64,000 bases of DNA from Guillardia theta CCMP2712 (Eukaryota > Protista > Cryptophyta), in NCBI RefSeq assembly GCF_000315625.1, contig NW_005434641.1, positions 201,113 to 265,112 of the forward strand. Direction: 5' to 3'. This document shows, one piece after another, positions 1 through 57,031 of the stretch. The translations under genes were made by a program, and so were the position numbers. Below the pieces are notes generated by a model. It was not told the origin of the DNA. It did not search any database and worked only from the letters and a program-made list of their open reading frames with translations. Within the stretch, counting starts at the first letter, position 1; each line of letters starts with the position of its first letter.

Positions 1-315
1 TCGCCGCTTACTCAAAGTCAAGTTTCATCAAGCCTGCGGACACTCAGGCACGCAGTGGCACTGGGCAGGCTGGCCGAGAGTCGGCGAAGCCTCGGAGGCT
101 TGACCGGCGGCCGCCGGGGCACTGAACTGAGCACGCGGCACAGGCGGGCCATACGGAGACAGAGCTTCGGACGGCGTGGCACGCTTGACGCTCAGTTTCC
201 ATCGCGGTTTATCGCGCAGCCTCACGGTGCTGCCACACTCAGCGGCAGTCGCGGCCGAGACTCGGGCTCCCCCTGCGGAAGGCCGTGATAGCCACCGGGA
301 AGCCAACGGGACCCA

Positions 316-2803
316 TCAATCAGCTTCCTCCTCCAAGAGGAGGACGTTGTCTTCAACTGACTCGCTGATCAAACTTGTGAGGCCGCACGAGATCTTGGAG
401 CGCGTGGCTGGTCCCTGCCGCGTCTCCACGTCAGCAGGTCTCAGCATGCGCCTCTCTGACCCACCTGGATGCGCATCCCGAACCTTCTTGCGACGCTCGC
501 GAACCCGCCATGGTAGATCTTGATCGCGTGCACCTGCTGACGTGTCAGGCTCACTCCCTACTGCCTTCAGCTGGGCACCAGGTCGGTCATCCCGTGCTGC
601 TCCATCTGCTCCTCCGTGGGCATGTACCAGAGGCGACGAGGCTTGACGCAGGAGGAGGCGGCAAAGAGATACCTGTTCATCTGCCTGCAGCGTCAGGTGG
701 GAGGTGCAGGTGGCCAGTCACCTCCACGAGGGCCTCCCGCACGTGCTTCTCGCTCTTGAAGTGGACGGCACTCCGTCGGCGAGGGATCACATCCTGCACC
801 TGCACCCCTGAAGCATCCCAGGATCTCGACATCTTGCTCCGCTCCCGATCAAAAGAAGAGAAGATGCGATCGGAAGATTGCTCGGCCTCACTGTTCCTGT
901 GCCCGTAGAGGGAAGGATCGCTGTGCTTCATGCTCTCTCTCCCTCTCCTTCCTGGCTTCAGGGAGACCACGGTGCGAGGACGAGATTTCAGTTCCTGAAT
1001 CCCCGGGGGCTCCACCGATGACTTGGGAACCTGCACGTCAGCCTCTTTGGAAACTGAATGATCTGCCCCTTTCCGCTCCATCTCCATCTCCATCTCCTCC
1101 TCCTTGTCCTTGTCCTTGTCCTTGTCCTTGTCCTTGTCCTTTTTTTTCTTGTCTTCTTGCTCCTCCTCCTCCTCCTCCTCCTCGAAAGAGTTCTGGTAGG
1201 TCAGAGCATCATTTCTTCCACCCGCCATAGAAGGGTCCTCGACTTCCTTCTCTCGCTTCACCTTCCTCATTGAAACCACTTTCTCCTTCTCTGCCTCCAC
1301 CTCTCCAGTCACTGCCACATCGTTCCAGTTTGCCGCTTCGCTGAGTGCGTTCGATCTCGTCATGCTCAGCCTTTCTTCGCTCTTCCACTGCTCTCTCATG
1401 CTCGTCACAGTTTCTTGCTGAGCCCCACTTGTCAGCATCCAAGGGATCAAGCCAACGAGCCTCTGTACCTGCAGCCTGACCAGCTCCTGGGTCGATGTCG
1501 AGAGAGGCTCGAGCGTGAACTTGAGCGCATCTGCAATCTCCTTGAATCCCTACCACCACAGCAGTCAGAGCCGTCACAGCAGACGCATACCAATCATCGA
1601 GACTCTCCCCTCCGTCAGGCCCCCACCTCCTGCATAGCCCTCCTCGCCTCATCCGAGAAACTCTGGCCCCGATGGGTCGAGCTGATTTGCACGTCCTCGC
1701 CGTCCTCCTCGAAATGATACTCCTGCAAGGAGCACTCGTGCTTGAAGTGCTGTATCCAATCGCAGAAACTGCTCGTGCTCTCGCACCTGCCGCCTCCTGG
1801 TCAGGATTCTCCTTTGCGTTCGGACTTCCCACCTGAACTGCAGACGCCGCCGGAGCCCAGGGAGCTGCAAGATGAAGGAGAGAGAGTGAGAGGGATGAGC
1901 TCCGAAACATGCGCCTCTAAGGTTTACGCTGAGGAGGGGGGAAAGTAGGTCACCAGGAGATCGATCGCTTCTGCTGTTGTCGTAGTATTCTCTGCACTCC
2001 CCCACTGAGCCGAACATGCGCATTTGAAGCGAGTTGTCGCTCTCCTCAACGACCAGATGGACGAGTTTCCACTTGATCGGCTTCTTTGATCCAGATTGTG
2101 TTTGTTTCTGAAGAACAAAGATGGAGCCCTCGCGCAGGACTTGCTTTCCCCTCAAGTTGAGCGACAAGTGTTCGACCTGTTTCTGCTCTGTACCCTTCCG
2201 TGAAGCACTTTCTTGGAAGAGAGAAGAAGTCAAGTCTTTTGGATCTTCTAGCCACACATAAACTTTGCTTTCCAACCTTGCCGTCAAGATGTCTGCGGCA
2301 ATCTTGAGCTTATCCACCAGAACCTGCCGGTTTCGGCTCTGGATTACCACCTCCAGCAGCATGACCGATTGACTTTCTGAAAATTCTTGTTGTTTTCGAT
2401 CAATCACAAATATTTCATTTTTCTCAATCATGCACAGCATTCTCAAGGCATCAACGACCTTGTTCTCAGCATTCATCAACGGAAGCAACGGAGGTTTGCT
2501 GGAGTTCTCTCCTCGTCTGCATTGATAAGCCACCCACACACTTGTAACCTTTATCAACGTCTCCTCTGTCCTTTCCGCGATATGCTGCCGCAGTCCTTTT
2601 GCTACTTCATTATCTGCTAAGGTGATGCTGTGAAGTATGCTCTCCGGCAAGTCCAGGCCTTCTCTGGTCTCCATCTCTGACAAAGCTTGCAACAGCTGCC
2701 CCCCTTCGTCAACAAGCAGCTTGAGGTCTTGTGAAATTGTTCCTGCCCCATTATCTCCCCCTCCTCCCCTGGCATGTTCTGTCATACCTCCGCTTGACGT
2801 CAT
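316..2803 (-). CDS. Multi-exon PH-like domain / coiled-coil protein
   Basis: ORF 1649..2803 has a PH-like segment (VLREGSIFVLQK...KWKLVHLVV...LLSVNLRGA...SFILQLP). Downstream ORF 677..1450 is charged, with E and DK repeats. The last exon reads ISESVEDNVLLLEEEAD* with its stop at 316-318. Confidence 0.55.
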
Positions 2804-4334: not shown

Positions 4335-4931
4335 TCATTTCATTACAAGATCATGAAGAAAGTCAGGGAAAAGGGTCAAAGTAAACAACAAAAGCATGGT
4401 GGGGATTGCTGACAACAACAGGAACGCGCGCGTATCCGAGAACAATTCCTCAGCTCGGTCTGCAACGCTGTTGTAGGTCGGACCAGCTTGCTTGCGAAAC
4501 TCTGAAACCCTTTCTGAAAAGTCTGGAGCAAGGCCATTCCGCATCTGAAAGTTGTACCTCCTCCGAAGCTCCTCATCACCCAAGACTTCGAATGCTTCAT
4601 TCAACACAAGGAAATTCTCCACATCGTAATCATCTTCAGAGCTTGTGTCCGGATGCAAAAGACGGGCCTTTGATCGGTATGCCTGCTTGATCTCCTTCTG
4701 TGTTGCAGTCTTAGCAACACCAAGTACCGCATAGTAGTCAATCAGGGTTTCTGACTGCTTTTCTGTCCTTGTGGCGTGCGGACTGACGGAGGTGAAAGTT
4801 GGTGGACGGCAGCTTGCAGGGCCATTAGGACGGAGGAGGGGAGCATAAGAGAAACCCTCCACGAGGGAGAAGACGCATGCTATCAGCAGCAGCCATCCGG
4901 CGCCCCTTGCTGCAGCTGCCCGACCCTGCAT
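4335..4931 (-). CDS. DnaJ (J-domain) protein, probably plastid-targeted, with a C-terminal TM helix
   Basis: DYYAVLGV...EIKQAYR...LHPD...LNEAFEVLGD J-domain. Hydrophobic signal peptide ending VEG-F then a Ser/Thr/Pro/Arg-rich transit-like peptide. Hydrophobic C-terminus. Intronless. Confidence 0.9.
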   Translation of the reverse strand: MQGRAAAARGAGWLLLIACVFSLVEGFSYAPLLRPNGPASCRPPTFTSVSPHATRTEKQSETLIDYYAVLGVAKTATQKEIKQAYRSKARLLHPDTSSEDDYDVENFLVLNEAFEVLGDEELRRRYNFQMRNGLAPDFSERVSEFRKQAGPTYNSVADRAEELFSDTRAFLLLSAIPTMLLLFTLTLFPDFLHDLVMK

Positions 4932-5079: not shown

Positions 5080-6130
5080 GGGCTTACGACCCGATCGGGG
5101 TAACCCCCTACCCCTTGTATACTACCCCCTAGGTTGCAAGCCCCAAAGTAGGGACCCCAGGTACTCTACAAGAGTCTCTATTGGCTGGTCTATTAGAGAA
5201 CCATCACCCTACCCCTGAAGTCTGGATTCTGTGACGGGGCTGATCATTTTGTTCAGGGTGGGTGGTGTTGTGCATGGGGGGGCGGAAATTGTGAGCTGCT
5301 AGGGGTCATCATCATTGAAGAGGTAAATTTACAAAAGTCGGTGGGCGATCAGAGGGTGGGTGGGGTGATGTGGGTTCGGATATCATATGGCTCGAGGACG
5401 TTCGGACAAGGTGGGGTAGTTTACAGGCAGAAATGGGGTCATGGAATTTCGGGGTGGCGGACACACAGATGAAATCCAGTAAAGTGAGTGTTTTGGACAT
5501 GGATGGGGTGGGTGGGTAGTGGGAAGGGGACGGGGGTAGGATGAACTTTTCGTTTTCAAGAGGGTGGGTGTATGCAGGGGAGTTGAGTAAACTTTCCCAG
5601 TACGAAATAGAAGAGCAACAGGGGTGGGTTATCTCAATAATCAGAGGGGGTGGATCAGAGAGCACTATACGGGGTAGGTAAGCATGATGGTAGGGTGGAG
5701 CTACTTTCATGATTCGGGTGGGGTTCTTGGTGGGTTACGAATTTTGAGTGGGTGGGGTCATGATTAGCCGTGGTAGGGTAGTAAACAAACGGGGTACTAT
5801 CAGGGATGGGTGGTAGCGATGATGGTAGTTGGTAGGCTACTTTGGTTGATTTGGATGGGTGGGGGTCTGACGAAGTTCTAATGCACTGGATATGGGCCAT
5901 TTCAAGGGGGTAGATCATTTGATCAAGTCCACGAAGAGGGTGGGGTGGTGGAGATGGATGGAGTGGCAGGGATGGCAGCAGCGGATGATGAATGCAGGAA
6001 TTAGGGAAAGGAGGCAGAGGATGCAGAGGAGGCAGAGAAGAACAAGTTTGGATAGACGACATGTTGTGAATAGGAGACGAAGATCATTTGCACACAAAGA
6101 GAAGACAAATAGACCCGGGGGCATGCTTGA
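5080..6130. other. G-skewed GGGGT/GGGT-rich intergenic tract between divergent DnaJ and phytochrome genes
   Basis: Dense GGGG/GGGT runs on +, short palindromes such as GGGGTAACCCC (5097-5107), no credible ORF. Confidence 0.6.
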
Positions 6131-6702
6131 CGAAGGGGAAAGGGGTGTTTGCGATTTTTACATGTTCGGAGAGTGATAAGCGATTTGAATGCGACGATGA
6201 GGATGAGTATGGAGAGAACGAGAGATCGTAATTCTACCATGAATGTTTGACAGTGCTTGATGTGAATCCTGTATGATGCGATGCCGAAAACCATGCGCAT
6301 GGATCGGAACTGTGATTTTTTCAATCTGGACGGAAATTGACGCTGTGTTGAATTGTGGGAGTTGCTGCCATGAGGGAGGCCCAGGGATATTGTTTCATGT
6401 TTGGATGTGTGAGAGCTCGCTCGTCATTTGAGCTGCAAACTTGTCATTGTTCTTGCGCAAGCGCTGTTACGCGCGATCAAAGATGCTTTCATTTCCGAAA
6501 AGTACAAATCGAACGCCTGCGTTACTGTAATGATAAGACTGGAACTCTACATGCAGTTGGAAACGAATGGAGGGGTTTACTCACATATGAAGCAGGAGAA
6601 CATGTCCTGCCCTTGAGAATCCTTTCCTTTGGTCAGCGGCGGCATACATCGTTTACTTGCCCCAGAGGAGCGTTCCGGATTCAAGATCTCAGAGCATTCC
6701 AA

Positions 6703-9700
6703 ATGGATCAGCTGACACATGTGATTCCTTGTGCACACCATTCATCATTATCTCATAAAGGATGATTTCTAGGAGGTCAGAGCGAGGCAGCTTCAGGCTG
6801 ACGTACTTGTTCACGAGCAGTATGTTGGTAAGTTGCGCGAATTCACATTATCAAGCTTTCATCTTAAAAATCTCAGGTTCTTCAGCCAAATCAAACGGGT
6901 CAGGGGGCTCTTCCGAGGGTCTTCATGGCACCATTCCATCTGTCGAAGAAGTGATCGACATATGATTCTGGATAACGCTGTGATACTAACCTGAACCACC
7001 TAGATGGAAACCTACACCCGACTCTTGAACAATCCTGGCGAAATACAAGTGATTTGAATCTGGTTGGATCGTCGGATAGCTTACAGTGATTGCAGCCGCA
7101 TGGATATTTCATGTTGATCGACGAATTAAACAACTTCAGTAATCTGATGTTATTCAGAGGATGTTAGGTTGTAATCCCTGGTTATGTACAGCTGTACGGG
7201 CTGTTAGCAACAACATCGAGAAGCTATTCGGAATCCCATACAAGGATATGCTGGGAACCCAGGTATGACAAGAGAACTTTAAATTTTCAAATCGATCTGG
7301 CAAATGCTCACGTCTGTCTTACAACTTTGATAGATGATGTCTTTGTTCAAAGAACGAGAGGTGCATCGTTTCAGCACTGCCATTTCGTTTTGCCTAAGAT
7401 CATCGCAGCGCTTGGATTCAGCCGTAGCTATGAGCGACCTTTCGCTCGCGAACCCCGTTACTGTAACAGCTCTTGGCTTAGGTACTCTTCAGGATTGTTG
7501 AATTTGTTGAGCCTGAAATCCTGACTAGATCCCTCTGGGAAGAAATTTGGAAACATTACTGTAAACCTCATTCTTCATAGGTTCGTATTTTTTCTTTGTT
7601 AGCTCGCCCTCATGCTTGGTGGTATGTGCAAAGATCTTCTTCTGGTCTCCTTGTGGATATCGAGGAATTTGATTTGACAGAAAATTCCTTTGCTGCTCAT
7701 CAGGTGAATTAGCTTTGTAAGTATTGTGCTGTTTGACCCTCTCAAAACAGAGAGTACGAGTTGCCATTGAGAAATTGAACGCATCCACGAACCTGACTGC
7801 TATGTGTCAGCAAGTATCGAAGAATTTTATCTGAATTGTGGTTGCAATCTTTGACTTTTTACAAAGGTTGTCGAAGAAGTATTCAATACCACGGGGTATA
7901 TTCATCATGCTGAGATCTCGAAAAGTCTGATATGTAAACCGTTTCAGATATAATAGAGTCATGGTTTACAAGTTTCATGAAGACATGCATGGAGAGGTTT
8001 TTGATTACTCTCAAATTCAAAAGGCATTGACCGGATTTCAAGGTCATTGCAGAGTGTAAAGCTGCAGATGTTTCAGAGTCGTGGCTTGGTTACACCGTGT
8101 TGTGGCCCTATGGATTATTGAAATGCAATGATCAGGTCTGCATTTTCCAGCGACAGACCTTCCACAACGAACAAGGGATCAGGTTCTGAGAAGTTCTATT
8201 GGTGATGAGCCATGACCTTTCATCAGTTACGGGATGAACATGTACGTCTCATTGTGGACAGCCAGGTAAATGTCAAATTCTATCTTCTTCCATTTGCACT
8301 GCGATGTCAATCCCCACGTTCATCGTGCTTACACTTGATACTCAGGCTGTGCATGCGAAGCTTGTAAGTTGGATTGATTGGAAATAAGGATGAAATCATT
8401 GTTTCAATTGAACAGGTCACGGACAATCTAATTGCAAAGGCTGAATCCATCAACCTGAACGGTTCGACACTCAGAAGAGCTCACAGGCAACATTTTAACC
8501 AATGTGTGCCAAGAGTCACGTCGTTGGATTCAGATGCCATCTGGAGTACCTTTGCAACATGCAAGTACGAGCTTCTTTAGTATTAGCTATGGTACACATC
8601 TTCGTTCAAAGCTGTTCGAATTTCGGCCGAGGTTGACTATGGTTGATGCAGGTGGTCAAAGATCAGCTCTGGGGACTCATAGTTTGTCATCACTCGGAGG
8701 TTTGCTAGAATGAATTTGAAATGAACACTTTTGACGAAGACCTCAGTCTCGGATTGTTTCATATCAGATGAGAATGGCTTGCGAATTTCTTGCGCAAGTA
8801 TAGATTTTCTGTGAGGAAGGGGATGCCAACTGACTTGCTTTCCCTCTTCCAAAATTCTTTCTGTGCTTCACAGGCCTTGGCGATGAGAATATCCAGGTTT
8901 CAACCTGATTCGCCCATGCAAATGAATTGATCCATGACTTTCCACAGCATAATTGACATGGAGCATCATCATCGTCACGAGGTTAGCAGCATCATTCACC
9001 TCGCCAGGACGAGTCATGACCAGTTGCTTTGCAGCACTCATTACATCTACATGCAAAGCTCTGCGATCTCATGTATCAGCAAGGTTGCAATAACTAAATC
9101 GTCTTGAACAAAACTTAGCAACTTTCGGTGATAGGTCACAATCCTGGGCTCAGATTAAAAGGATTAGGTGAGAAAATACTGTCATATAATACGTTTCTAT
9201 TCGCTGACATGGTGCTGTTTGTGTAGTGACATCGTCGCCCAACCTAACTGATTTGTTGGAGGGCGTCAGTAGCGCTGCAATACAATATGCTGGGAAAATC
9301 AGTGTATGTGGAGATGCCCCTGAACAGGTAGGGAATGTAGATTAATCATGCATGAAACGATCATGGGTGGAGTTGACGAATGTCAATGCTATCAGGAGGA
9401 CCTAAAGAAAATTTGCTCTCTAATTCGTACCACCTATGAAAAAGGTAAGAATAGGATTACAGTTGGATTTTACGTCATTCGTTGCCCTGTGCGCTTTGTG
9501 TAACTTGTGCTTCGGTGCAGCTTTGGAAAAAGAAGGAATCGTTGTGATCAATAGGTAGGATTTTGTGATCGTGCGGCAATAATCCATTGAGACGTGTTTC
9601 AGCATGGCAATTGTTGATCAAAGTCTTCAACGATTGTGCCCAAAGTCAGCAGGTATGCTGAAAAGTATGGTCTCGCCTGTATTCATACCTTGCAGGATTG

Positions 9701-12700
9701 TTGGCTATTCCAGTAACGAGCGATGGACTGATCATACTTTTCCGCCCCGAGGTTGCTTCTTTTGTTTTCGTATGTCACAATGACATTTACTTCACCAAGT
9801 TGTCTACAACGATCAGATGGGGTGGTGATCCGAATGCGCCGGCTCGAATCAATCGTGATACGGTAAATCAATGAGCCAACTTCTTTTGCAAATTGACGGT
9901 GTTCAGATGGGTGGAAGCACCATGCACCCTCGTGGTTCTTTTGAGATATATTCAGATTCGATCAAGCATCGGTGCGCTTCGTTGTACTTGAATGCAAATG
10001 TCTTACGTCGACCAGATGTAATCCATGGCTGAAGTGGGAAATTGATAATGCACTCGGTATATCTGAGCACCTTGTGGATCAAAGTGGCATGTTCTTACGA
10101 TCTGCTTTTAGGACTTGGACTGCTGGTCAATGACATCATCAAATCTGTGGATACCGATGAGGTTTGTAAGGTAGAATAGCAATCAATCTGTGAAACAGCC
10201 ACGTTGCAGGTCCGATCGAATGTCCTAGTACGTCTCAACTCGGAGCGGATGCAGGTTACTTTTCCTTTGCATGTCATCATGGCGATCATTGATGTGTGTT
10301 ACGTCAGACGCAGCATGACAAAGAAGCCGTTGTGTCAGAAATGAGGTAAACAAGTCGGCCTTGTGCATAAGATTGAAACTACTGCATTATCTCTTTCTTG
10401 GTCCCCCTCACATGACCAATCATATTTCAGTTACCTCATCGATTCAGTCAAAGCGCCTGTTCTTGGCATGGACAACCGAATGCATATTGTTCAGGTTTCA
10501 ATAATCACAGGATATTCGTGATTTGCTGACAAAAAACGATTTCAGTGGAATGCTATGCTTGCTCAGCTGACAAACTACCGTCGTGAAGATGTTCTTCATG
10601 ATGTTTTCAGAGTTTGCGCTCTGACACAAGAGTGATAGGTTCTTGGCAAATCGCTCTACGGATTTGTTCCAGAGTCACACAGGTCTGGAAGAAAGAGAGT
10701 CTGCTTTAGTAAAACTGATGGTGCTGACAGGGATTCTCTTTCTAAGGCAATGGAGGTATCACCCCACTTACATTCATTGACTAGAGGATTTCTTAGAGTG
10801 GATTCACTTTGTGTTTCAGAGGGCCATGAAGGGTGAAGAAGTAGAAGCGTTCGACCTCTCCATCGTCAAGGCTAACGCGGTGTGTCTTGAGGCAGCTCCG
10901 AGGCCATTTTCTCACTGGGAAGCAGGCGGATTATCCAGCGAGTCAAAGACGAGTAGACCTCCGTGTGAATGTCACAGCTCGGTGATTTGCATTTGCATTT
11001 ACCGATGCAAGTCCTGACAATTTTTCTTCGACAGCTTCACGCCTACGGGGAATTGTTCTGGATTGGTTTGCTTGGGTCAGGTGAAAAGAAGTTTTGTTTT
11101 CTTACGCATCTAGACATTAACTTCTCATTCGCCTCTGGCTTGGCATCTTGCAGGATATCACAGCCACCAATGCGGGTATGATGTTACATGCTTGTGCGTA
11201 TTGGACTCGCTAAGGCACGTGATTGCAGCAAGGGGTCGTCAAGCAGAACTCGAGCAACAGATGGATGCGGTCTGATGTATTGCATGAATTTTCACAACTC
11301 CATGACTCATTTCTGCAGGTCCTGCACATGACAGCAGCAACAGAATCGTCTCAAGTAATATCTTGCTTCTTTCAAATGGCGGAGATCATCGTAAACATCG
11401 TTTGACCTGTTTACCACCCCAGGGAAAAGATCCACCGGAGAGTAACTTTGCGTTCGAACCTGACAAGGTCCATTGTACTAATCTCCTCATCATTTTGATG
11501 CTCACTTCCTTTACAGGAGTCGGCGTTGCTGGGGGAAGGAAGTTTTGGTAAAACTTATCGCATGAGAGGCACTATGGATGGACAGGTCTTTGACAACTTG
11601 AATTAAGTTGAGCCTCACTGAATGCTTTAGATATACGCTGTCAAGATGGAGAATGTGAAAAAGGCAGAAAAGAATGGAGTGCAGGTTTGATACAACCTTT
11701 CTTCCTTCCTTTGTTTTGTCGCCGCGCACCATTACTTCTTTTCAATGACGTGGGGTTTCTTTAGCTTGATGCGTTGAAAAGAGAGGTTCACATGCTAATG
11801 CGGCTTAATTCACCGGTATAAACGATTTGTCTTGTTGTGCATCCTGCGCTGACTTATGGCGACACCAGCATATTATTCGTTACTATACGTGTTATATGTT
11901 CAAGAAAGCCAAGTACTTCTGTATTGTCATGGAGATTGCCGAGGTTTATTCCTATTGAGCCATGTTTTTGTTTCATTGATGAATGAGTAGGGTGGAACTC
12001 TCGGCGACCTCATTGAAGATACGCGCGGGACTGTCTCTCGCATCGGTGCCATCCTGCCCTGATTCGTGTGCACAAGTGTAAAGCACTGATTGCGCAGGAG
12101 ATGAACGAATTCGAAGCTTGAGTAGTCAGCTCGCCAAGGTCAAAGATTTCACAAGAATTCCTTCCATCTGAAAGTTTTACCAGGCGTTGGCTCACATACA
12201 CTCTCGCCGCATGTTGCATCGAGACATCAAACCTCACAACATCCTCTTGACACAAGTATTTTGACAGCTTGATCGAGCCTTCCTTTCGATTCTAAACTGT
12301 ACCACCTTTAGGATGGCTCCGAAGCCAAAATTACTGACTTTGGTCTTGCGTGTGTTATTTCGTCTGGTAAGCTTGTCTGCTTCTTTTTTCCCGTGCAAAG
12401 TCTGATCTCCTCCTTCAGCTGCCGCTGCATCATCAAGAGCAGGAACTCTAACCTACGCGTCTCCTGAGAAGGTTACAGTTGCTTGATTCCATTGGTCGGG
12501 TCTACATTCGTACTTACCAAGTCTCTGCAGGCTGGGGCGAAGGGTTATGATTCCAAGGACGACATGTACATTCTTCATGCTAAAGATGATTATCAGTGAC
12601 GTCTTCGATGCAAGGTGGGCCCTGGGATGTATCATGTCAGAGTTGATCACTGGCGTTCCGATTTCTGCCCGGTGAGCTTCCCGCCTGCCTGTAGTGGGCT

Positions 12701-14645
12701 TTGACGAGAATGTTGTAGGTGCGGAGGAGGAGTCTTCGCCTTCAATTCCTCCCTCGTTCAAAAGACGGTCGACGTAAGAAAGTTGGTGTTGTAACGTGGC
12801 ATGCTTGTGACCTTGCCTCAGGAATCGATCGAGGCCTCTCCAACCCTAGGTCGAGTGGTCGAGCAGGTTTCCCGCTCTCTCTCTTGGTCTTTAGGAGCTG
12901 ACATTCGAAAAGCTGCTGGCGACAGACCCTGCCAGGAGGCCGAACGCTGTTGAGCTCGCAGGTAGAAATTCTGGCATTTCCCCGGGGTCAGCGAGCCTTG
13001 CATGATATTGACTCCATGCTAGCTATCCTCGAACCACATCCAGCAAGCGGCGCGATGCAGGTGAGGCTGAGGAATGGGGTGAACGATTCCTTTGACGAAA
13101 GTGACCAGGACGAGGCTGAAGAATTGTGTGAGGAGTACATTTGCGCTATCTGCCAAGGACTGGTTCTGGATGCACACACTGTAAGTACATTCTTTCGCTT
13201 ACTAACACCATCATCATTCTCATTCTACTTCGCCGCAGGTCTGCGCTGATGAGCACGTGTTCTGTGGGTCTTGCCTCACGAAATGGCTTGAAAACAAGGT
13301 GAGAGCTCCTGGGCAAAGAATCTTACCCTTGTCGCCTTACTCGTGGCTTTAGAATGATTGCCCCACTTGTCGAAAGCCCGCAACTCACCCTCATCGGTAC
13401 TTGAGTGTCTCGATCCCTCGCCTGCTGATTTCTCTGGCAGCCTGCGCATTATCAATAATGCGGTCGAGAAGCTGGCAGCGCGTGTGCTGGATGCTGTAAG
13501 TTGGAACGCTCGGCGGTGGCAGGTGAAACTGACGGGTGACGCTATCAGAAAGCACTGCAAGAGAGAGCCAAGAGGAGAGAGGAGGTGCTTGAGATCGACG
13601 CGTACTTGTACACACCTGACCGTACAGCAGATTGAAGCCAACAGGATCGCCGAGAGGGAGCATGTATGGCAGCGATAGTTGCATTTAATGTGTTGCTAAC
13701 TGAGGCTCCTCGATGGGTAGGAGCGGACCGAGTCTGATCGCGATGCTGGACATGGTTAAATGCCGCTTCGAAGATGTTCTGCTTTTTTACGGCCATGGCA
13801 GGCGCAATAGGTCAAGACGTTTGCACCGCATGGAAGTACATGCAGGTGGGTACGTGACGGAGGAGAAGCTTCGTTGAGATGCGGCTGGTCTGCAGGGACA
13901 AGCTCAATTCGGAGCCGGCTGCACTCTCTTCAGGTTTGCGTGCATGGCCCAGCTAATCTGTCGTGACGTTTGCCTCTCCTGCACAGGCATGCGGCGAGCG
14001 GGTTGATCGTGGAGGTCTTCCATGGGAACGGCTGGTATCGCTTCAGGAGTAGAGCAGGAGGAGAGACGAGATGGTGCAACAGGTGAAGTCACTGCGAGCA
14101 TGTTGCACAACATCATGACACGTCATCAGCTGCGGAAACCTTGGAGACTCGGACTTCGGGGCTCAAGACGCGGTGGCTCAGCTGGAGAGGTAGGAGGTGA
14201 CTCGCTGCAGGCCATCGGTCCTCATCCTCGTACTCCTTCCAGGGATGGAGGAGAACATGTCCCGCCCGCGGGCCTCGGGCCCCTCGACGAGACAGGATAC
14301 TGGGAGTCTTCGGTACCTCGAGAGCGTTGAATGGCCCCTGTTTCTAATGGCCATTGGCAGATACAGAACGGCAAGATCGTGCTGGTCAACTCCGACGAGG
14401 AGGAACTTTACCTGGACTCGAGCGGTGAGCTTGTCGAGTTTTCTTTCACATCACCGTGAAATGCCGCTGACTGAGATGCTCCACTAGGAACTCTGGTCTG
14501 GCTATCTCATCCGGGCATGAACAAGGTATGTGGCGGCTGCTGGTTTCCCCTGCGTGGGCGGTCTGACTCCTTGCAGGCCATCATTGTTCGAGAAGGAACG
14601 GCGTCATCTGTTCAACGGTCAGAGGGAGAAGCCTTGACCTCCTAG
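6703..14645 (+). CDS. Phytochrome-eukaryotic kinase hybrid (PAS-GAF-PHY-PAS-Ser/Thr kinase-RING + unknown C-terminal region), dozens of exons
   Basis: Manually spliced exons give NPGEIQ/PHGYFML (PAS, ~7030-7130); RVMVYKFHEDMHGE (~7956), FPATDLPQ (~8143), NLNGSTLRRAH/RCHLEYLCNM (8452-8560), LWGLIVCHH (~8667), RMACEFLAQ (GAF); GLLAIPV...LFRPE (~9696), WGGDP (~9818), HPRGSF (~9925) (PHY); APVLGMD...WNAMLAQLT (PAS); LGEGSFGKTY (~11530), YAVK, HRDIKPHN (~12217), ITDFG, YASPE, WALG (kinase); CAIC...CADEHVFCGSC...CPTC (RING, 13142-13370). Stop TAG at 14643-14645. The start may extend upstream to ~6370. Confidence 0.93.
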
Positions 14646-15112
14646 ATTCATCTGCGTGTACATGAGTTTGAAATCAATAGCGCAATTGCTCAACTTGCGA
14701 AGTTCAAAAGCCGGCGGCTTATTAGGCTGCCCCCGGCCGCCGGTGCCGCGCCGAGTCCGATCCCGGCGTGTGACCGTGCCGGGCAGTCACTGTCCCCGTC
14801 ACGCCGCCGATCACGGTGAGTCGGAGCCAGGCTCGGAGCAAGCTCGCTGAGCCGACTCCCGAGTCCGCGGGTCACCCACAGAGTCCGCCAGCCGCCGCTG
14901 ATCGGACTTTGAACGGTACTCAGTGACTCGTGCCACGGCGAGACCGGCTAGTACCGCCCCAGTGCCGAGGGCCGCTGACCCGGGCCGGCGACCCCGGCGG
15001 CCGGGCGCCGCCGGGGCCCGGGGCTCGCCCCGACTCGCACTGCGGCAGTCACGGTGCCAGTTGGTGATCGCCGGGATCGGCTCGTCGGGATGATCGGAGC
15101 CTTTCACTGGTC

Positions 15113-15320
15113 TTTTTTTTACTCAAAGTTAAGTTAAAATCAGTACGAGGACAATCAGGAGAGTCTAGGAGGCTTGACCCTGACACTCAGCCTCCGTCGC
15201 ACCGTGAGCGGCCAACCGGCGAGACTTCAGAGAAAAGACAGCGAGAACCAAACCCAATCCTGCCGACTGCTGTCCCCCAAACTTAACTGACTGTGATACC
15301 TTCCCTTAACTGCGCGCACT
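15113..15320 (-). repeat. Dispersed ~200-bp repeat, copy B (ends in an A8 run on the - strand)
   Basis: Inverted homolog of 3515-3718. T8 at 15113-15120 directly abuts ACTCAAAGTTAAGTTAAAATCAGTACGAGGACAATCAGG. Confidence 0.85.
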
Positions 15321-15499
15321 GAGGACAAGTCCCCCGCGCGGCCATGCCAGCGATGTCGCGGTGGCCGCCGCCGAAGGAATGAGACATGTTTGCCTGAGTT
15401 CCGGGCCGGGGCCGGGCCGTCCGATCAGCAGTCATGGCACGGTCGGAGGCCTGAGGCCCCCAGGTTGTAGCTCCGGTTTTGGACCTTGAGCTACGTTTG

Positions 15500-16950
15500 A
15501 TGACCCCTGCAACACCCCCACCCCCCATTTTAAGCCCCCCAATTTCCTCACTACCCCAGTGATTTGAATGCCCTCTCTACCCCCTCAAGGAGGACACATT
15601 TTCTTGACCCCCCTTTTATCTATCACAAACACCCGTATCTTGACCACCTACCCATGTTTCTAACTCATTTTCGCTGCACCCACCCCAGTGCATTTCATCA
15701 CTACCCGCGGTTTTCCTATCCTCCACGTGCGCGAAGTGGCCCCTAGACCCACCCCCTACCCCTTCATTCTCCCCCTCCTCACCCCCAATCCTCAAGATAA
15801 CTACCCCACCAATCGTTGAGAAATACCCCCTACCCTTCATTTGACTACATCGCTCGGTGAGGAAACATCTCATCAAAGAAAACTACCCTACCCCCATCAC
15901 CCCACCCCCACCCCCATCTATAGATCAACTTACCCCGATCTTCGCGTCAGCCAAAGGATTGTGATGGTAGGGTGGGTAATCCTTGGGGTTGGTAAATTAC
16001 CGGTGCATTGATAAGATTTTTTATGGGTACTCGCGAATCAACAGGGGTAGGGGTACCCCCTCTTTCGTAATCCTTTTGCACACTAGCATCTTTAGCATGC
16101 TGGACCTCGACCTGTACCCCACCCCTCAAAACCTACCACCCCCTGAGTTCGAACCAAGGTGTTCACCCCTACCCAACCATTTGTTCCCCAGCCACATAAC
16201 CCCACCTATTCAAATCAATGGCCTCCTCCAGGTCTCTAGGAAGGTCTTATCTCTAGGTCACTACCCCTCCAATTCAATATCGTCTTGAAGCCACCCTACC
16301 TGCTATTGGTGCTATTTCCTTACTACACCAGCCAACCACCCCTATCTCTCACCGCCCTGTTTGATGCTAACCCCTACCCCCCTACTATCCCCTATATGTC
16401 TGCACGCGATCAGGCGAGCTTCACACGACGCTCTTGGAGAAGGATTTATTATACCTATAGCAACAAGAATCTTCGAATGAATCACTAAGATATTCTATCA
16501 ATGACCTCACCTTTGACCTCTCTCCCTCCATTACACCTTCTTTTTGCCAAGGGGCTGCTACTTGGATTCTACCCCAAGATTGTGGAGATCGAAAATCTTG
16601 TAATGTGGGTGGGGTTCAGTGATCCGTAACAGGGGTACGAAATTAGGGGGTAGGGGGTGTGATATGGAAGAATGTCTTATGAAAGAGGTGGGTACAAATG
16701 TGATAAATGTACGGTAGGGGTAGGCAAGATTGAATTTCTGTGTGGGGTGTATGGCGAGGACGGTGTTCGCCTTCCTTCTGAGGTAGGGTCGTAGAACCGA
16801 GGGGTCCGAGTGACTGGCTTGTAAAGGTGACTACAATCTGGGGGTGGGTGATGTTGAGGTTGGTACCCCCTGGGGAAGATGGGGGGTAGAATGAGGAAAT
16901 CTGTGGGTAGGAAGAAACCCCACCCCCCTTTTTAAAGGGTCGACCTCGTG
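15500..16950. other. ACCCC/GGGGT strand-skewed intergenic tract
   Basis: Mostly C-rich (TACCCC, CACCCC) to ~16580, then G-rich to ~16910, ending just upstream of the ATG at 16975. Confidence 0.6.
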
Positions 16951-16974
16951 CCTGAATCACACCAATCCATCGCT

Positions 16975-17791
16975 ATGTCCATGCCGAAGATTCTCCCAGC
17001 AGCTGCCCGCGCCCTTACCAGGCATGGTTTCTTTCTCCTCCTCAGTCACCCAAGCATGTGCTTTCCAATCTTATGTCTTTTGACCTTGTTTCCCTCTTTA
17101 TCTACGTTCTGATGGCCTGTATCGCTCCTTGCCTCGTGTCTGAAGTACTTCATTGGTGTTTTTGCTTCATCCTATCGGCTCCTTATTGCTGGTCCGATTT
17201 CATCATCATTCTTGACACTGCTGTTGAAATTCTCGAAGACACACAAACTTCCCTAATTTTCCTTGAACCTTCCTTCGAAAAGCAATCTTTTGACCTGTGA
17301 TGCTGCGCTTGCCTGTTCAGTTGTTCCCCCGTGCTCATGATTCATGTGGTCTTATTGTTATTATTCTGCAACTTCTCTTCTGAAATAATTCATCGCTTTG
17401 TCTCGATGATCATGATGCACTTCTATATGCTCACATCGGATCCTTGCAAGAAGTCGCCTCACGTACTGACTGTTTAATTCCTTCAGGTCTGGAGCCAACA
17501 CCACCGCGCAGAAGCGCTTCATGTCTGCCACTGCTGCCGAGAGCAGCTCCATGAAGGACTACTTCTTCTCCACCTGGGTCAAGCCTGATGTGAGCGTTGA
17601 AGAGCTGCTGCAGAACGTCGACTCATTGCCTCCATCAGGTGTACCCCATTGTCTTCATTTGCGGTCTCGCCACCACCTTCTGCGGCATCACCATCTCCAA
17701 GCGCTTTGGTATGCACGAGAACGTCACCTGGTCCAAGAAGGCAAGGAACCAGGGCGTTGCCCAACAGTATGCTCACAAGTACCCTGGGTAA
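16975..17791 (+). CDS. B12D / NDUFA4 (MLRQ)-like small mitochondrial membrane protein
   Basis: Spliced: MSMPKILPAAARALTR/SGANTTAQKRFMSATAAESSSMKDYFFSTWVKPD/VYPIVFICGLATTFCGITISKRFGMHENVTWSKKARNQ...YPG*. The WVKPDVYP + TM + V-x-W-x-K pattern matches B12D. Arg-rich presequence. Confidence 0.75.
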
Positions 17792-18414
17792 GTCGAAAAG
17801 CTCTGTTGACGCATGTGCTGTTGCTGCCATCTCCGCTTTCATCCTACTCTTCTCCTGAGTCAGCATCTGCCTTTTCTGATTTTAATTCTCAGAACTGAAA
17901 GCGCTGTCGTCGCTGGAATCCAGAAGTAAATTAGATCCGTCAGTTAATCACGTACTTTGGGAGATTCGATTCTCTTCGATTGTTCAATAGGCATGTCAGT
18001 AAACATAGTGATAAATTAGACCGGCCCGTGACGTTCAACCCGGCGTCAATGCGATGGGGGAGCTGAGTTGCTTGAAAGGGTCGTAGCGGTAAGAACAAAG
18101 ATCTGCCGCCGAGATCACGATCAAGATTATTGACAGGCTCGGTCCGATGACTCAGTGGCACGGTGACCGTGCGGTCAAGTTGCCGCTCACTCGGTCCCCT
18201 AGCCTGTAGTAGTACGCCGTAGCTACCGTACCCGGAGCGACGCACGGGCTGTGACGGCGAAGAAGTCAGTGAACTTCGGACCGTCCGCTGCTCCGAGGCT
18301 CGCAGCGGGCCCGGCGCTGTCGGAGGGCCTGTGACCGTACTCCCGGTACGGTCCCGGCGTAGAGGTAAATTCCAAGCTTGCCTCAGGTATCAACTGTGAG
18401 GAACTTTTTAGGAG

Positions 18415-19233
18415 ATGGTGCGAGCGGTGGTAGTTGGTGGAAGCTCGGGGATGGGCAGCGCGTTCGCTAGGCATGCAGTCAGGCAAGGGGGAGAAGTGAT
18501 CATCTGCTCCAGGTCCCAAGAGAAGCTGGACAAGGCAGCAGATGCTATAGCGAGTGCGGGAGGTGAGGGGGCAAGAGAGAGGGTCAGGACCAAGGTGCTC
18601 GACAACACAAACGAAGAGGAAGTGAAGAAGTTCTTTGAAGAGCTCCCTCCATCGTCCTTCGACGCTCTCGTTGTAACCGCGCTCGGGAGAGCTGCCCATG
18701 GCTCGTTCCTCCAGCTCGAGACCTCCAAGGCGAGGGAAGTGATGGAAGGTAAGCTTTGGGGGCCATGGTATTGCGCCAAGTACGGTGCCCCGAAGATGGC
18801 AGCGGGGGGTGCCATCGTCTTCGTAAGTGGAGTGCTCAACAGACGTCCAGGGCTCAACTGTTCTCCTCTCGGTGCTGCTAACGGTGCGGTAGAGGCCCTA
18901 ACACGGTCTCTCGCACTCGAGCTAGGTCCCCAACTCAGGGTGAACTGCCTTTCCCCTGGTTTCGTTGACACGGAGAGGTTTGATCACATGGAAGCAGAAA
19001 AGAAGACGCAGATGATGGACGCTACTGCTGCATCCCTGCCGCTCAAGTGCGTGGGGGATCCGGACGTGATCGGGGAGGCGTTGTACTTTCTGGCTACCAA
19101 CAAGTTCACGACTGGGGTGGTGCTGGATGTAGATGGCGGGCATCAGATCCGTCAGTACGCTCTCCCCAACGATGTGTACCACTCTCTGCGGGCGAGCGGG
19201 ACGTTGCCAGCCATCTTCCAACTCCAGCCGTGA
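18415..19233 (+). CDS. Short-chain dehydrogenase/reductase (atypical active site), intronless
   Basis: VVVGGSSGMG Rossmann motif, IVFVSG, RSLALELGPQLRVNCLSPGFVDT, TGVVLDVDGG. Confidence 0.92.
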   Translation: MVRAVVVGGSSGMGSAFARHAVRQGGEVIICSRSQEKLDKAADAIASAGGEGARERVRTKVLDNTNEEEVKKFFEELPPSSFDALVVTALGRAAHGSFLQLETSKAREVMEGKLWGPWYCAKYGAPKMAAGGAIVFVSGVLNRRPGLNCSPLGAANGAVEALTRSLALELGPQLRVNCLSPGFVDTERFDHMEAEKKTQMMDATAASLPLKCVGDPDVIGEALYFLATNKFTTGVVLDVDGGHQIRQYALPNDVYHSLRASGTLPAIFQLQP

Positions 19234-21428: not shown

Positions 21429-22236
21429 ATGGGAAACATTAACTGCACCTTCCAAGATCGGACATGCTTCCCGTGGACGGACGAGAATCAGATGAAATTA
21501 CGGAGACGGCAGGAGGAGAAGGAGCGAGGGAAGGAAGTCGACGTCAACACCTGGAGATACTCTTGGATGAGCAAGAACGCACTGGCAAACAAGCTCTACA
21601 GCTACTGCGAGCATGACCACGGTAAAGTTCCCCCTCTTGACCCTCCTCCTCAACTTTCTCCTCCAACACCAACACCTCCTCCTCCACTACTCATCTTCGT
21701 TCCTCTTCCCCCAATGCCTCCTCTTCTCGCAACACCTCTTTCCCCTGCTCCCCTCATCAACCGTGCATCCTGCTTACTCTAGTTCAGCGGATGGCATCAA
21801 CAATCTTTGTGTTGAGCACGGAGCCGTCAAGTACATCAACTTCCTCAACCAGGAGGGCGTCGCTCCCCTGCATGTGGCGTGCTTGCATGGATCTAAGAAC
21901 GCCGTGCTCGTCCTACTCGCGCATGGCGCCGACGCGAGCCTCAAGACGGCAGGAGGCGCGTCCCCACTACAGATCGCGCGGGAGGCGAACCAGCCGGAGG
22001 TTGCCGACATCCTGTCACGGGTGAGTCTCTCTGCGGAAGACGAGGAGGTGACACTGTCTCAGCGCGTCTCCTCCTTCTCGTCGTTGCGGCTGCCCAGCGC
22101 CAGGAGCAGACTAGATAGCCTAGACAGCTCGAGCATCCGGTCCGGCTTCCTCGTGAGGTCACCAGGAGCAGGAGGCGACGGAAGTTGGCCGACCAGCGCG
22201 AGACAAGGAAACCGCGAGGGCGAGTCGATGGGGTAG
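21429..22236 (+). CDS. Ankyrin-repeat protein, possibly N-acylated
   Basis: EGVAPLHVACLHGSKNAVLVLLAHGADASLKTAGGASPLQIA ankyrin repeats. N-terminus MGNINC. CT-rich intron ~21622-21787. Confidence 0.75.
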
Positions 22237-55880: not shown

Positions 55881-57031
55881 CCAATGTTTTCTTTCTATCT
55901 CTCCCTAACACCCTTGCTCCCTCTCACCCTCTCTTTCTCTCCCTCACTCCCTCGCTCCCTCCCTCTCTCACCCTCGCTCGCATGCTCGTCTCCCTCTCTC
56001 TTTCTGACTCCCTCGCTCCCTCCTTCCCTCCCTCCTTCCCTCCCTCTCTCCCTCCTTCCTTCCCTCCCTCTCTCCCTCCCTTCCTCCCTCCCTCTCTCCC
56101 TCCCTTCCTCCCTCCCTCTCTCCCTCCCTTCCTCCCTCCCTCTCTCCCTCCCTTCCTCCCTCCCTCCCTCTCTTCGTCTCTAACTCTCTTTCTCTCTTGA
56201 CTCTTTTGTTTGCCTCCTCCCTCTGCTCACAAAGTCCCGAATCCCTTGCTGCTTCATGCTTCGAGAAACTTTTTCTCCCCTGCTGCCTCCTGTCAGCACC
56301 TCGGTCACCTGTCCTTCTCTTCTACTCTCCTCACTCTCCCCTTTCCCTGTTCTCTCATTCTCTCTGTCCTTTCTCTTGCTCTAGATTTCCCTTTCTATCT
56401 CTGTGTTTCTCCACCCTGTTGTTGCTCTGTTTGATATTTCTTCTCCATTTTCCTAGTCTCCAACCTCGTTCCCTCCTTCCTGGATTACCTCCATCACCTC
56501 CAAATCCTCCAACCACCAATTACTCTTATCTTTTCGCATCATCTACTCTCAATCCATTGTTCAACCCCTTCCTGTTCTTTGCCTTCCGTGACTTCTCTTT
56601 CACTCCGCAACTCTATCGCTTTACAATCTTTCTCTTCCCCTGACTTTCTCATTATCTTCCATCCCAGTCATTTTCCCTACACGAATCTCGCTCAGTTCTC
56701 CACTTTTTTCTCTACTTTTTCCTTCTGTTGGTTCAAATTAATTGCACAGACGCATCAGAGTCAATTATGTTTTCAACCGATCCTTCCATCTTGAAGTTGC
56801 AGCATTACAATGATTCTGATCGTAGAAGTACAAATCGATGCATGCGGACTGATTATTTGGATTACCGTCCTGTAGAAGGCAAGACTCCTAGAAGGGTCTC
56901 TATTCAGTTCGTTTGAGGATATACAGCATGCTGTTGGCTCCATTAAGCCTCCGTGACCGGCCAGTGAGCTACTTGTCAGGGCGAGCAGAAAGCTGGTCCC
57001 GATGATCCCAAGAAGGGATCTCGGAGCTTCA

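What the first reader, a model, noticed from the sequence alone, without database searches (positions are those of the whole stretch)
6703..14645. Hidden one-polypeptide light-to-phosphorylation-to-ubiquitin system: phytochrome + Ser/Thr kinase + RING
Seen: exon-by-exon splicing gives a full photosensory core (IQPHG, RVMVYKF, PATDLPQ, HRCHLEY, LWGLIVCHH, WGGDP, HPRGSF), one PAS, a kinase with catalytic motifs intact (GEGSFG, AVK, HRDIKPHN, DFG, SPE) and a C3HC4-type RING. The ORF track misses it because of dozens of tiny introns. Known: canonical phytochromes end in histidine-kinase-related modules, and plant phytochromes rely on separate E3 ligases. Cryptophyte phytochrome-eukaryotic-kinase (PEK) hybrids have been described, but to my knowledge their output is largely uncharacterised. 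Inference: a self-contained light-gated kinase/E3 ligase.
Basis: partly seen in the sequence, partly recalled or inferred. Interest (0 to 1): 0.85.

Follow-up and report, generated by a model that had tools for sequence, protein, structure and literature searches.

The report
Cryptophyte phytochrome-kinase-RING gene (PEK)
This fusion type (PEK) is already published, but its biochemistry is still untested.

Summary
Window 6703-14645 (+) is one gene, Guillardia theta GUITHDRAFT_163142.

**Gene model.** It has 77 exons and 76 introns (75 GT-AG, one GC-AG) and encodes 1292 aa. Spliced RNA-assembly contigs of 4.0-4.5 kb cross the PHY, PAS, kinase and RING regions and the tail. All 57 introns from 8700 onward came out the same from an RNA-constrained model and from a model guided by the Hanusia phi ortholog (94.7% identical, no indel).

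**Architecture.** PAS_2-GAF-PHY-PAS-Pkinase-RING(C3HC4), then a helix and a conserved 158-aa C-terminal domain. The bilin Cys-His, the PHY tongue motifs, the kinase catalytic motifs and the RING E2-contact residues, including the linchpin Arg, are all present.

**Novelty.** The architecture is not new. Cryptophyte "phytochrome eukaryotic kinase hybrids" (PEK) were named by Duanmu 2014. Li 2015 lists G. theta PEK1-3 and names RING in its domain-figure legends.

**New here:**
- A corrected gene model; the public 1155-aa model is mis-spliced.
- A tentative tandem polo-box-like fold for the C-terminal domain (Z about 6).
- A very regular intron array, one intron every 104±16 nt. The paralog has about 11 introns.

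The scan's first stage had already noted the chromophore pocket and the post-RING tail on this same window.

Light-gated kinase and E3 activity remains an inference.

The parts
6703..14645 (+). Complete CDS of G. theta PEK (GUITHDRAFT_163142): 77 exons, 76 introns, 1292 codons plus the stop at 14643-14645
   Evidence: Homology-guided spliced alignment to the Hanusia phi ortholog P0003: 94.7% identity, no indel. All 57 introns from 8700 on are identical to the RNA-length-constrained model. Spliced RNA contigs.
7016..7664 (+). PAS_2 domain (aa 54-163), includes IQPHG; no Cys in the first 60 aa
   Evidence: Pfam PF08446 on the ortholog, E 3.9e-15; coordinates mapped
7793..8894 (+). GAF domain (aa 191-356) with the bilin-binding Cys298-His299 (HRCHLEY) and the DIP-type motif PATDLPQ
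   Evidence: Pfam PF01590, E 1.5e-16. The Cys-His aligns with the CH of PhyA and a cyanobacterial phytochrome.
8487..8533 (+). The only GC-AG intron; it splits the Arg codon just before the chromophore Cys
   Evidence: A GT-only model lost RCHLEY; allowing GC donors restored it and raised identity from 93.2 to 94.7%
9050..10143 (+). PHY domain (aa 374-559) with the tongue motifs RWGGDP, HPRGSF and WLKWE
   Evidence: Pfam PF00360, E 6.2e-31; PDB Cph1 8.9e-72, PhyA 4.2e-72; introns 9863-10209 shown directly by RNA joints
10338..11159 (+). Single PAS domain (aa 591-708)
   Evidence: Pfam PF00989, E 2.7e-19; all its introns listed among the RNA joints
11523..12960 (+). Eukaryotic Ser/Thr protein kinase domain (aa 757-1009): GEGSFG, Lys782 (AVK), HRDIKPHN, DFG, SPE
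   Evidence: Pfam PF00069, E 1.9e-55; nearest solved NEK1 1.4e-35, then NEK7, PDK1, Aurora A
13142..13370 (+). RING-HC finger (aa 1034-1072), followed by Arg1073
   Evidence: Pfam zf-C3HC4_2 1.8e-08 and zf-RING_2 9.5e-08; RNF4/BMI1/RNF8/COP1 by sequence; RNF8 Z 13.3, rmsd 1.5 A over 90 aa
13386..13753 (+). Long helix after the RING (aa 1078-1133): invariant start (RLRxxNNxxEKLA), variable charged remainder
   Evidence: AF2 model helices 59-72 and 75-109, pLDDT 87-91 falling to 69-78 at the far end; family alignment
13804..14642 (+). Conserved C-terminal domain (aa 1135-1292), two beta6-alpha halves, invariant RWCNSCG and WLSH; tentatively polo-box-like
   Evidence: 29 invariant columns in 18 homologs; AF2 pLDDT 92.4; Foldseek top hit Plk1 PBD, E 9.3e-4; VIA Z 6.0-6.1 to PLK1/PLK2, 5.6 to PLK4 PB3; no Pfam or PDB sequence match
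14646..14695 (+). Start of the 3' UTR; the RNA contig runs another 452 nt past 14695
   Evidence: X3 record 4 maps 14695 to record position 453

Best explanation
This is one of the PEK (phytochrome eukaryotic kinase hybrid) genes of the cryptophyte alga Guillardia theta.

**Shown.** One spliced mRNA encodes a 1292-aa protein with this domain order: PAS_2-GAF-PHY photosensory core with the GAF Cys-His for a thioether-linked bilin, one PAS, an RD-type Ser/Thr kinase, a C3HC4 RING, a long helix, and a family-specific C-terminal domain.

**Inferred mechanism.**
- Like other phytochromes it is a parallel dimer.
- Bilin photoisomerisation refolds the PHY tongue and shifts the helical spine that runs through the PAS into the kinase. 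This changes kinase activity, probably through trans-autophosphorylation of the activation loop.
- The RING, which has the residues used by active E3s to hold and prime E2~Ub, works as a dimer held by the following helix. It ubiquitinates either the receptor itself or a substrate brought in by the C-terminal domain.
- If the polo-box resemblance is real, that substrate may be bound in a phospho-dependent way.
For: - **One transcript.** 4498- and 4026-nt spliced RNA contigs from two runs of different studies (X3/P3, X8/P5) cross 8745-14695. The ORF is continuous.
- **Same architecture in relatives.** About 20 cryptophyte homologs, including Hanusia, Hemiselmis and a Rhodomonas-named MMETSP entry, carry it as full-length transcript ORFs.
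- **Domains.** All are above Pfam cut-offs on the 94.7%-identical ortholog.
- **Photosensor.** It aligns end to end with Cph1, PhyA and PhyB, with the Cys-His, DIP-type, WGG and PRxSF motifs conserved.
- **Kinase.** All catalytic motifs are present; the nearest solved kinases are active Ser/Thr kinases.
- **RING.** Canonical spacing. It has Ile1036, Trp1062, Pro1070 and Arg1073 in a C-P-T-C-R-K ending identical to RNF4. The fold match to RNF8 is Z 13.3.
- **C-terminal domain.** It is 96% identical between the two genera and has 29 invariant columns across the family.
- **Literature.** PEK is defined as PCM + single PAS + Ser/Thr kinase; RING appears in the figure legends; G. theta PEK1-3 are listed.
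Against: - There is no biochemical evidence for any step. A 2026 review states that nothing is known about light sensing by cryptophyte phytochromes.
- The chromophore is unknown.
- DIP is DLP here.
- The polo-box similarity is weak: Z at most 6.1, Foldseek TM 0.35, no Pfam POLO_box hit.
- Assembled contigs, not single molecules, show the continuity. The contig starts about 190 nt inside the CDS, so the 5' end rests on the ortholog only.
- An in-frame ATG at 6370 with no stop before 6703 leaves the start slightly uncertain.
- Raw reads were few: 31, lying mostly at the 3' end.
Confidence: 0.8

Rival explanations
1. The RING serves receptor turnover, not signalling. Light-activated PEK autophosphorylates and then ubiquitinates itself, so the RING and tail desensitise the receptor in cis, much as separate E3 ligases remove active phyA in plants.
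For: Kinase and RING sit on one chain and RING E3s commonly auto-ubiquitinate. The RING residues are intact. Phytochromes are dimers, which places each RING next to a sister chain (established knowledge; not tested here).
Against: A 158-aa domain with 29 invariant columns follows the RING. That suggests a bound partner rather than self-modification only. Nothing here separates the two readings.
Confidence: 0.25
2. The kinase or the RING is a non-catalytic scaffold, and the signal leaves through protein binding only, as is argued for the histidine-kinase-related domain of plant phytochromes.
For: No activity has been reported for any PEK. Several family members have altered RING ligand positions, and Pfam does not call a RING in them (P0010, P0014, P0019).
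Against: In this gene every catalytic kinase motif and all eight zinc ligands plus the E2-contact residues are present. They are 97% conserved with Hanusia.
Confidence: 0.12
3. Photosensor, kinase and RING are separate neighbouring genes that the assemblers joined artificially.
For: Contigs can join overlapping transcripts (tool caveat).
Against: There are 56 consecutive GT..AG joints with an unbroken frame and no stop between domains. The exonic lengths fit the contig coordinates exactly in seven intervals (two checked by hand). The same fusion exists as transcript ORFs in several other cryptophyte genera. Inter-domain linkers are only 20-50 aa.
Confidence: 0.02

Closest known systems
Cryptophyte PEK, phytochrome eukaryotic kinase hybrids (Duanmu et al. 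2014 PNAS; Li et al. 2015 Nat Commun, PMC4525182)
   Same: PAS-GAF-PHY core, a single PAS, a C-terminal Ser/Thr kinase, and RING in the published domain figures. Li 2015 took G. theta PEK1-3 from this very genome. This locus is almost certainly one of them.
   Different: Nothing in kind. Added here: the exact exon structure, a 1292-aa product in place of the public 1155-aa model, and the conserved C-terminal domain, which none of the text held here mentions. I could not read Duanmu 2014.
Canonical plant phytochromes (phyA/phyB)
   Same: Photosensory core with the GAF Cys-His and the tongue motifs; PhyA E 4.2e-72, PhyB 1.3e-69.
   Different: Plant phytochromes have a PAS-PAS repeat and a histidine-kinase-related domain, and they rely on separate E3 ligases such as COP1/SPA. 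Here there is one PAS, a true eukaryotic kinase and a RING in cis.
Dimeric RING E3 ligases: RNF4, RNF8, RING1B/BMI1, TRIM, COP1
   Same: C3HC4 spacing, the C-P-T-C-R-K ending, and a RING flanked by a helix. RNF8 Z 13.3; RNF4 E 2e-10; COP1 E 8.7e-6.
   Different: Fused to a photoreceptor and a kinase. The substrate-binding part is not SIM, FHA, B30.2 or WD40, but a family-specific beta-rich domain.
Polo-box domain of Polo-like kinases (PLK1/2, PLK4 PB3)
   Same: Two beta6-alpha units at the C-terminal end of a kinase-containing protein. Polo boxes top both fold searches.
   Different: Z is only 4.4-6.1 and each half aligns separately. The packing of the halves differs (Foldseek rmsd 11-13 A). 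There is no sequence or Pfam match, and the phosphopeptide-binding His/Lys pair was not identified.
Ceratodon purpureus phytochrome with a tyrosine-kinase-like output, and neochrome
   Same: Independent recruitment of a eukaryotic kinase module to a phytochrome core, as noted in Li 2015.
   Different: Different kinase type, no RING, different lineage.

Membership tests
PEK (cryptophyte phytochrome eukaryotic kinase hybrid) | N-terminal PAS-GAF-PHY photosensory core | tested here: met
   Pfam PAS_2, GAF and PHY are all above cut-off on the 94.7%-identical ortholog; PDB phytochromes down to E 8.2e-79
PEK (cryptophyte phytochrome eukaryotic kinase hybrid) | A single PAS, not a PAS-PAS repeat, after PHY | tested here: met
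   One PAS at aa 591-708 and no second one
PEK (cryptophyte phytochrome eukaryotic kinase hybrid) | C-terminal eukaryotic Ser/Thr kinase in place of a histidine kinase | tested here: met
   Pkinase E 1.9e-55, HRDIKPHN signature, no HisKA/HATPase hit
PEK (cryptophyte phytochrome eukaryotic kinase hybrid) | Cryptophyte origin, grouping with other cryptophyte phytochromes | tested here: inconclusive
   The source is Guillardia theta CCMP2712, and all named close homologs are cryptophytes. No tree was built.
PEK (cryptophyte phytochrome eukaryotic kinase hybrid) | All parts on one transcript | tested here: met
   Spliced RNA contigs and a continuous ORF
Functional phytochrome | Covalent bilin binding and reversible photoconversion | not testable with these tools
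   Only the residues are seen: Cys298-His299, the DLP motif, and the tongue WGG/PRxSF
Canonical plant phytochrome | PAS-PAS repeat plus a histidine-kinase-related domain | tested here: not met
   Single PAS, then Pkinase and RING
Active eukaryotic protein kinase | Gly-rich loop, VAIK Lys, HRD Asp, DFG, APE | tested here: met
   GEGSFG, AVK (Lys782), HRDIKPHN, DFG, SPE. Activity itself was not tested.
RING-type E3 ubiquitin ligase | Eight zinc ligands with C3HC4 spacing | tested here: met
   C1034, C1037, C1048, H1052, C1055, C1058, C1069, C1072; Pfam zf-C3HC4_2 and zf-RING_2 above cut-off
RING-type E3 ubiquitin ligase | E2-contact residues and the linchpin Arg/Lys after the last Cys | tested here: met
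   Ile1036, Trp1062, Pro1070, Arg1073; aligned to RNF4 CPTCRK. The role of these positions comes from my own knowledge of RNF4 and other RING E3 structures.
RING-type E3 ubiquitin ligase | E2-dependent ubiquitin transfer | not testable with these tools
   Needs an in vitro assay
Polo-box domain | Match to the POLO_box sequence family | tested here: not met
   No Pfam hit at E<=1 in 18 members; no PDB sequence hit at E<=10
Polo-box domain | beta6-alpha fold, in tandem | tested here: inconclusive
   The secondary structure is 2 x (6 strands + helix). Z is 6.1 for half 1 against PLK1 PB1 and 4.4 for half 2 against PLK4 PB3. Both are below the tool's Z 8 caution line.
Polo-box domain | Phosphopeptide-binding Trp / His-x-Lys pocket | not tested

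The most novel reading that the evidence does not exclude
PEK would be a complete light-gated phosphodegron machine on one chain. The kinase writes a phospho-mark, the tandem polo-box-like C-terminal domain reads it, and the adjacent dimeric RING ubiquitinates the bound protein. Red/far-red or other visible light would then directly set the half-life of a target, without separate kinase, adaptor and E3 proteins.

A second unexcluded oddity concerns the 76 evenly spaced introns. They may reflect a distinct mode of intron gain or a spacing constraint in G. theta.
Probability: 0.15. Interest if true: 0.75.

Novelty: already known. Interest (0 to 1): 0.4.

Why it matters
PEKs are the only known phytochromes that carry a eukaryotic kinase and an E3-type RING in the same chain. 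They could show how a bilin photosensor drives phosphorylation and ubiquitination directly, and they could serve as compact optogenetic parts.

The practical gain here is a correct coding sequence. The public model of this locus lacks recognisable PAS_2 and GAF domains and mis-splices several exons, so anyone cloning from it would get a dead photoreceptor. The 1292-aa model, checked against RNA contigs and the ortholog, with its domain borders and a bounded C-terminal domain, makes the obvious experiments possible.

The intron array is a separate curiosity for intron evolution.

Tried and rejected
- **Gene finding.** Plain dynamic programming that maximised open frame, without a coding model, gave nonsense. 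Self-trained codon and splice models first collapsed onto the 3' part. Later they over-spliced and deleted real exons such as 10210-10254. Only the length constraints from the RNA contig coordinates and the ortholog-guided alignment gave a stable model.
- **GT-only introns.** These lost the chromophore exon until GC-AG was allowed.
- **Raw reads.** Run X17 gave only 31 reads, mostly at the 3' end, so it says little beyond one joint at 14425.
- **Joint list.** The read-laying table showed 15 of the 56 joints. The rest are inferred from record coordinates.
- **Six-frame search.** The Pfam PHY search of the genome misses this locus.
- **Papers.** Duanmu 2014 and Rockwell 2014 are not held. A search for 'PEK1' or 'GtPEK' returned only unrelated papers.
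- **C-terminal domain.** No Pfam family, no PDB sequence relative, and nothing in the ESM Atlas above TM 0.45.
- **Hanusia fragment.** The look-up of encoding contigs had no record for P0002.
- **Introns as mobile elements.** I looked for sequence similarity among the 76 introns. No pair shares more than four 8-mers, so this is not an introner-type family.
- **Not done.** I ran no complex prediction and no phylogeny. I could not submit my own spliced 1292-aa sequence to Pfam or the fold tools because it has no reference, so the 94.7%-identical, indel-free ortholog P0003 stood in for it.
Full report
**What the window is.** The closest database protein to a 33-aa exon (window 9229-9327) is P0001, 100% identical. 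NCBI names it hypothetical protein GUITHDRAFT_163142 of Guillardia theta CCMP2712, 1155 aa. The window is contig C33, 201113-265112, of that 87-Mb genome.

**Checking the observation.** No ORF in 6000-15500 is longer than about 137 aa.

I laid public RNA data on 8700-14695.
- RNA-assembly contigs from runs X3 (4498 nt) and X8 (4026 nt), which come from different studies, each cover the stretch from 8745 to its end as a chain of short pieces joined by 56 GT..AG joints.
- A third run of the sequenced strain (X1) covers it in three contigs.
- The 15 joints that the tool listed, plus four read from loose ends, gave an uninterrupted frame from the PHY tongue through the PAS domain.

The contig coordinates of eight exon pieces fix the exonic length of every interval between them. 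A frame-keeping search found introns that meet all of those lengths exactly and keep the frame open to a stop at 14643-14645. One more joint, at 14425, is seen in raw reads.

Independently, I aligned the Hanusia phi transcript protein P0003 (1292 aa) to the DNA with GT/GC-AG introns and no indels allowed.
- The result is 77 exons and 76 introns, encoding 1292 aa that are 94.7% identical to P0003.
- All 57 introns from 8700 onward are identical to the RNA-constrained set.
- One intron (8487-8533) is GC-AG and sits just before the chromophore cysteine.

**Domains.** Pfam gives:

| Domain | Residues | E-value |
|---|---|---|
| PAS_2 | 54-163 | 3.9e-15 |
| GAF | 191-356 | 1.5e-16 |
| PHY | 374-559 | 6.2e-31 |
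| PAS | 591-708 | 2.7e-19 |
| Pkinase | 757-1009 | 1.9e-55 |
| zf-C3HC4_2 / zf-RING_2 | 1034-1073 | 1.8e-08 / 9.5e-08 |
| no family | 1074-1292 | - |

On the public model P0001, Pfam sees only part of PHY, a shortened kinase and the RING. That model starts inside the PAS_2 domain and mis-splices several exons, including the chromophore exon.

**Photosensor.** Residues 40-575 align over their full length with solved phytochromes: FiDCB 8.2e-79, plant PhyA 4.2e-72, Cph1 8.9e-72, PhyB 1.3e-69.
- The Cys298-His299 pair aligns with the bilin-binding CH of PhyA and of the cyanobacterial protein.
- There is no cysteine in the first 60 residues. A phycocyanobilin, phytochromobilin or phycoerythrobilin-type attachment in the GAF domain is therefore more likely than the N-terminal biliverdin site of bacteriophytochromes. 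This is an inference from established phytochrome biochemistry.
- The DIP motif reads DLP. The tongue motifs WGG, PRxSF and W-x-E are intact.

**Kinase.** GEGSFG, Lys782 in AVK, HRDIKPHN, DFG and SPE are present. The HRD-x-K-x-x-N form is the Ser/Thr signature. The nearest solved kinases are NEK1 (1.4e-35), then NEK7, PDK1 and Aurora A within about 20 bits. I therefore call it a generic Ser/Thr kinase that is closest to NEK, without assigning a group.

**RING.** The spacing is C-x2-C-x10-C-x3-H-x2-C-x2-C-x10-C-x2-C.
- By sequence it is nearest to BMI1/RING1B, RNF4, PCGF proteins, RNF8 and, more weakly, COP1.
- The stretch from the His ligand to the end (HVFCGSCL...CPTCRK) closely matches RNF4, including the Arg after the last Cys.
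- From my own knowledge of RING E3 structures, Ile1036, Trp1062 and Pro1070 are the usual E2 contacts, and that Arg is the 'linchpin' that primes E2~Ub.
- An AlphaFold model of residues 1025-1292 (pLDDT 89) superposes on the RNF8 RING with its flanking helix at Z 13.3, rmsd 1.5 A over 90 residues.

**C-terminal domain.** After the RING comes an invariant helix start (RLRxxNNxxEKLA), a variable charged helix, and then a 158-aa domain with 29 invariant columns among 18 homologs. These include NGW-x-RFR, RWCNSCG and W-x-SH.
- It is present in every homolog that is complete at the 3' end, including those where Pfam does not call the RING.
- In the G. theta genome it was found only at this locus and at the paralog on contig C31.
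- It has no Pfam family and no sequence relative in the PDB.
- Modelled alone it is confident (pLDDT 92.4, pTM 0.89) and consists of two units of six strands plus a helix.
- Foldseek's best 20 hits are all Plk1 polo-box domains (best E 9.3e-4, probability 1.0), but with TM 0.35 and rmsd about 12 A.
- The Foldseek-independent aligner also ranks polo boxes first: PLK2 and PLK1 at Z 6.0, PLK4 PB3 at 5.6, the PLK4 cryptic polo box at 5.3, with KKT3 and Cdc5 lower.
- In the second look, half 1 aligns with PLK1 PB1 (Z 6.1, rmsd 3.0 A over 72 residues) and half 2 with PLK4 PB3 (Z 4.4, rmsd 2.5 A over 59).
- These Z values are below the tool's caution line of 8. I call the domain polo-box-like only tentatively, at roughly 0.5-0.6 for the fold and much less for the function.
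- Invariant Cys1157, His1173, Cys1191 and Cys1194 might form a zinc site; I could not check this.

**Family and literature.** About 20 homologs of 1280-1364 aa share the architecture. The named ones include Hanusia phi, Hemiselmis andersenii and a Rhodomonas-named MMETSP entry; the rest are unnamed environmental sequences from JGI.
- Li et al. [quoted passage not shown]
- They call them PEK after Duanmu et al. 2014 and name RING in the legends of their domain figures.
- Their supplement lists 'Guillardia theta PEK1, PEK2, PEK3' taken from this genome.
- A 2026 review again lists 'Kinase' and 'RING' among algal phytochrome domains and states that nothing is yet known about the light sensing of cryptophyte phytochromes.
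- Five loci carry a PHY domain: C49, C17, C66, C31 and this one. That matches the two PHY plus three PEK of Li 2015.

The architecture, and very probably this gene, are already published. I could not read Duanmu 2014 or Rockwell 2014.

**How it probably works.**
- *Shown:* one mRNA; one ORF; intact sensor, kinase and RING residues; a conserved tail.
- *Inferred from phytochrome, kinase and RING biochemistry:* a parallel dimer in which bilin isomerisation refolds the PHY tongue and moves the helical spine through the PAS into the kinase, changing its activity. A RING dimer held by the following helix then transfers ubiquitin from an E2 to the receptor itself or to a protein held by the C-terminal domain.
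- If that domain reads phospho-sites as polo boxes do, the kinase and the RING would be coupled through a phosphodegron. None of these steps is tested.

- The 76 introns are 43-85 nt, median 51. Exons average 50.3 nt with SD 16 (CV 0.32).
- Donor-to-donor spacing is 104±16 nt, and 46 of 76 introns are in phase 0.
- Random placement gives a CV of 0.96, or 0.63 with an 18-nt minimum exon. None of 20,000 simulations was as regular.
- The introns share no sequence.
- The paralog on C31 (1300 aa, 51% identical) has about 11 introns and exons up to 1133 nt. Only two of its intron positions coincide with introns here.
- A Hanusia phi transcript fragment (P0002, EukProt) reads through both borders of the 9227-9327 exon into non-coding sequence at the same positions. 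At least those two introns therefore predate the Guillardia-Hanusia split.
The similar period may or may not be related.

**Context.** Upstream on the minus strand lies a DnaJ-domain ORF (4338-4931). Downstream lie a short-chain dehydrogenase (18415-19230, +) and an ankyrin-repeat ORF (21613-22233, +). These give no functional link. The gene is lower in G+C (0.44-0.52) than its flanks (0.52-0.59).

**Verdict.** It belongs to a published family, so novelty is low. The functional claim remains an untested but reasonable inference. The corrected gene model, the tentative fold of the C-terminal domain and the regular intron array are the new points.

Noticed in passing
window 6703-14645: Extremely regular intron array: 76 introns, donor-to-donor spacing 104±16 nt, exon-length CV 0.32 against 0.96 for random placement (0 of 20,000 simulations as regular), 61% in phase 0, and no sequence similarity among the introns.
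   Followed up: partly
L001 3268-7802 (G000:C31:37267-41801): A second PEK paralog: 1300 aa, 51% identical, ortholog of Hanusia P0009. It has only about 11 introns and exons up to 1133 nt, and 2 of its 11 intron positions are shared with the window gene.
   Followed up: partly
window 9227-9327 and protein P0002: A Hanusia phi transcript fragment (EukProt EP00960_Hanusia_phi_P031126) carries the orthologous exon flanked by unspliced sequence at the same two borders. These introns are therefore shared by the two genera, and some unspliced RNA exists there.
   Followed up: partly
window 6703-9224 versus protein P0001: The public gene model GUITHDRAFT_163142 (1155 aa) starts inside PAS_2 and mis-splices the chromophore exon and others. 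Pfam finds no PAS_2 or GAF in it.
   Followed up: yes
window 56000-58000, minus strand (also 16000-18000 and 1-2000, minus strand): Short intron-like GT..AG pairs scoring like the PEK introns are enriched: 18 in 2 kb against a background of 0-10. This may be another gene with many tiny introns.
   Followed up: no
window 6000-12000 versus flanks: The PEK gene is markedly lower in G+C (0.44; exons 0.50, introns 0.44) than the neighbouring DNA (0.52-0.59). Similar low-GC stretches lie at 48-50 kb and 52-54 kb.
   Followed up: no
window 6370-6702: The frame of the start codon stays open upstream to an ATG at 6370. The start at 6703 rests on the Hanusia ortholog beginning at the same Met, not on RNA from this species.
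   Followed up: partly
window 4338-4931 (-), 18415-19230 (+), 21613-22233 (+): Neighbouring ORFs: a DnaJ domain, a short-chain dehydrogenase/reductase and ankyrin repeats. No evident link to the PEK gene.
   Followed up: partly
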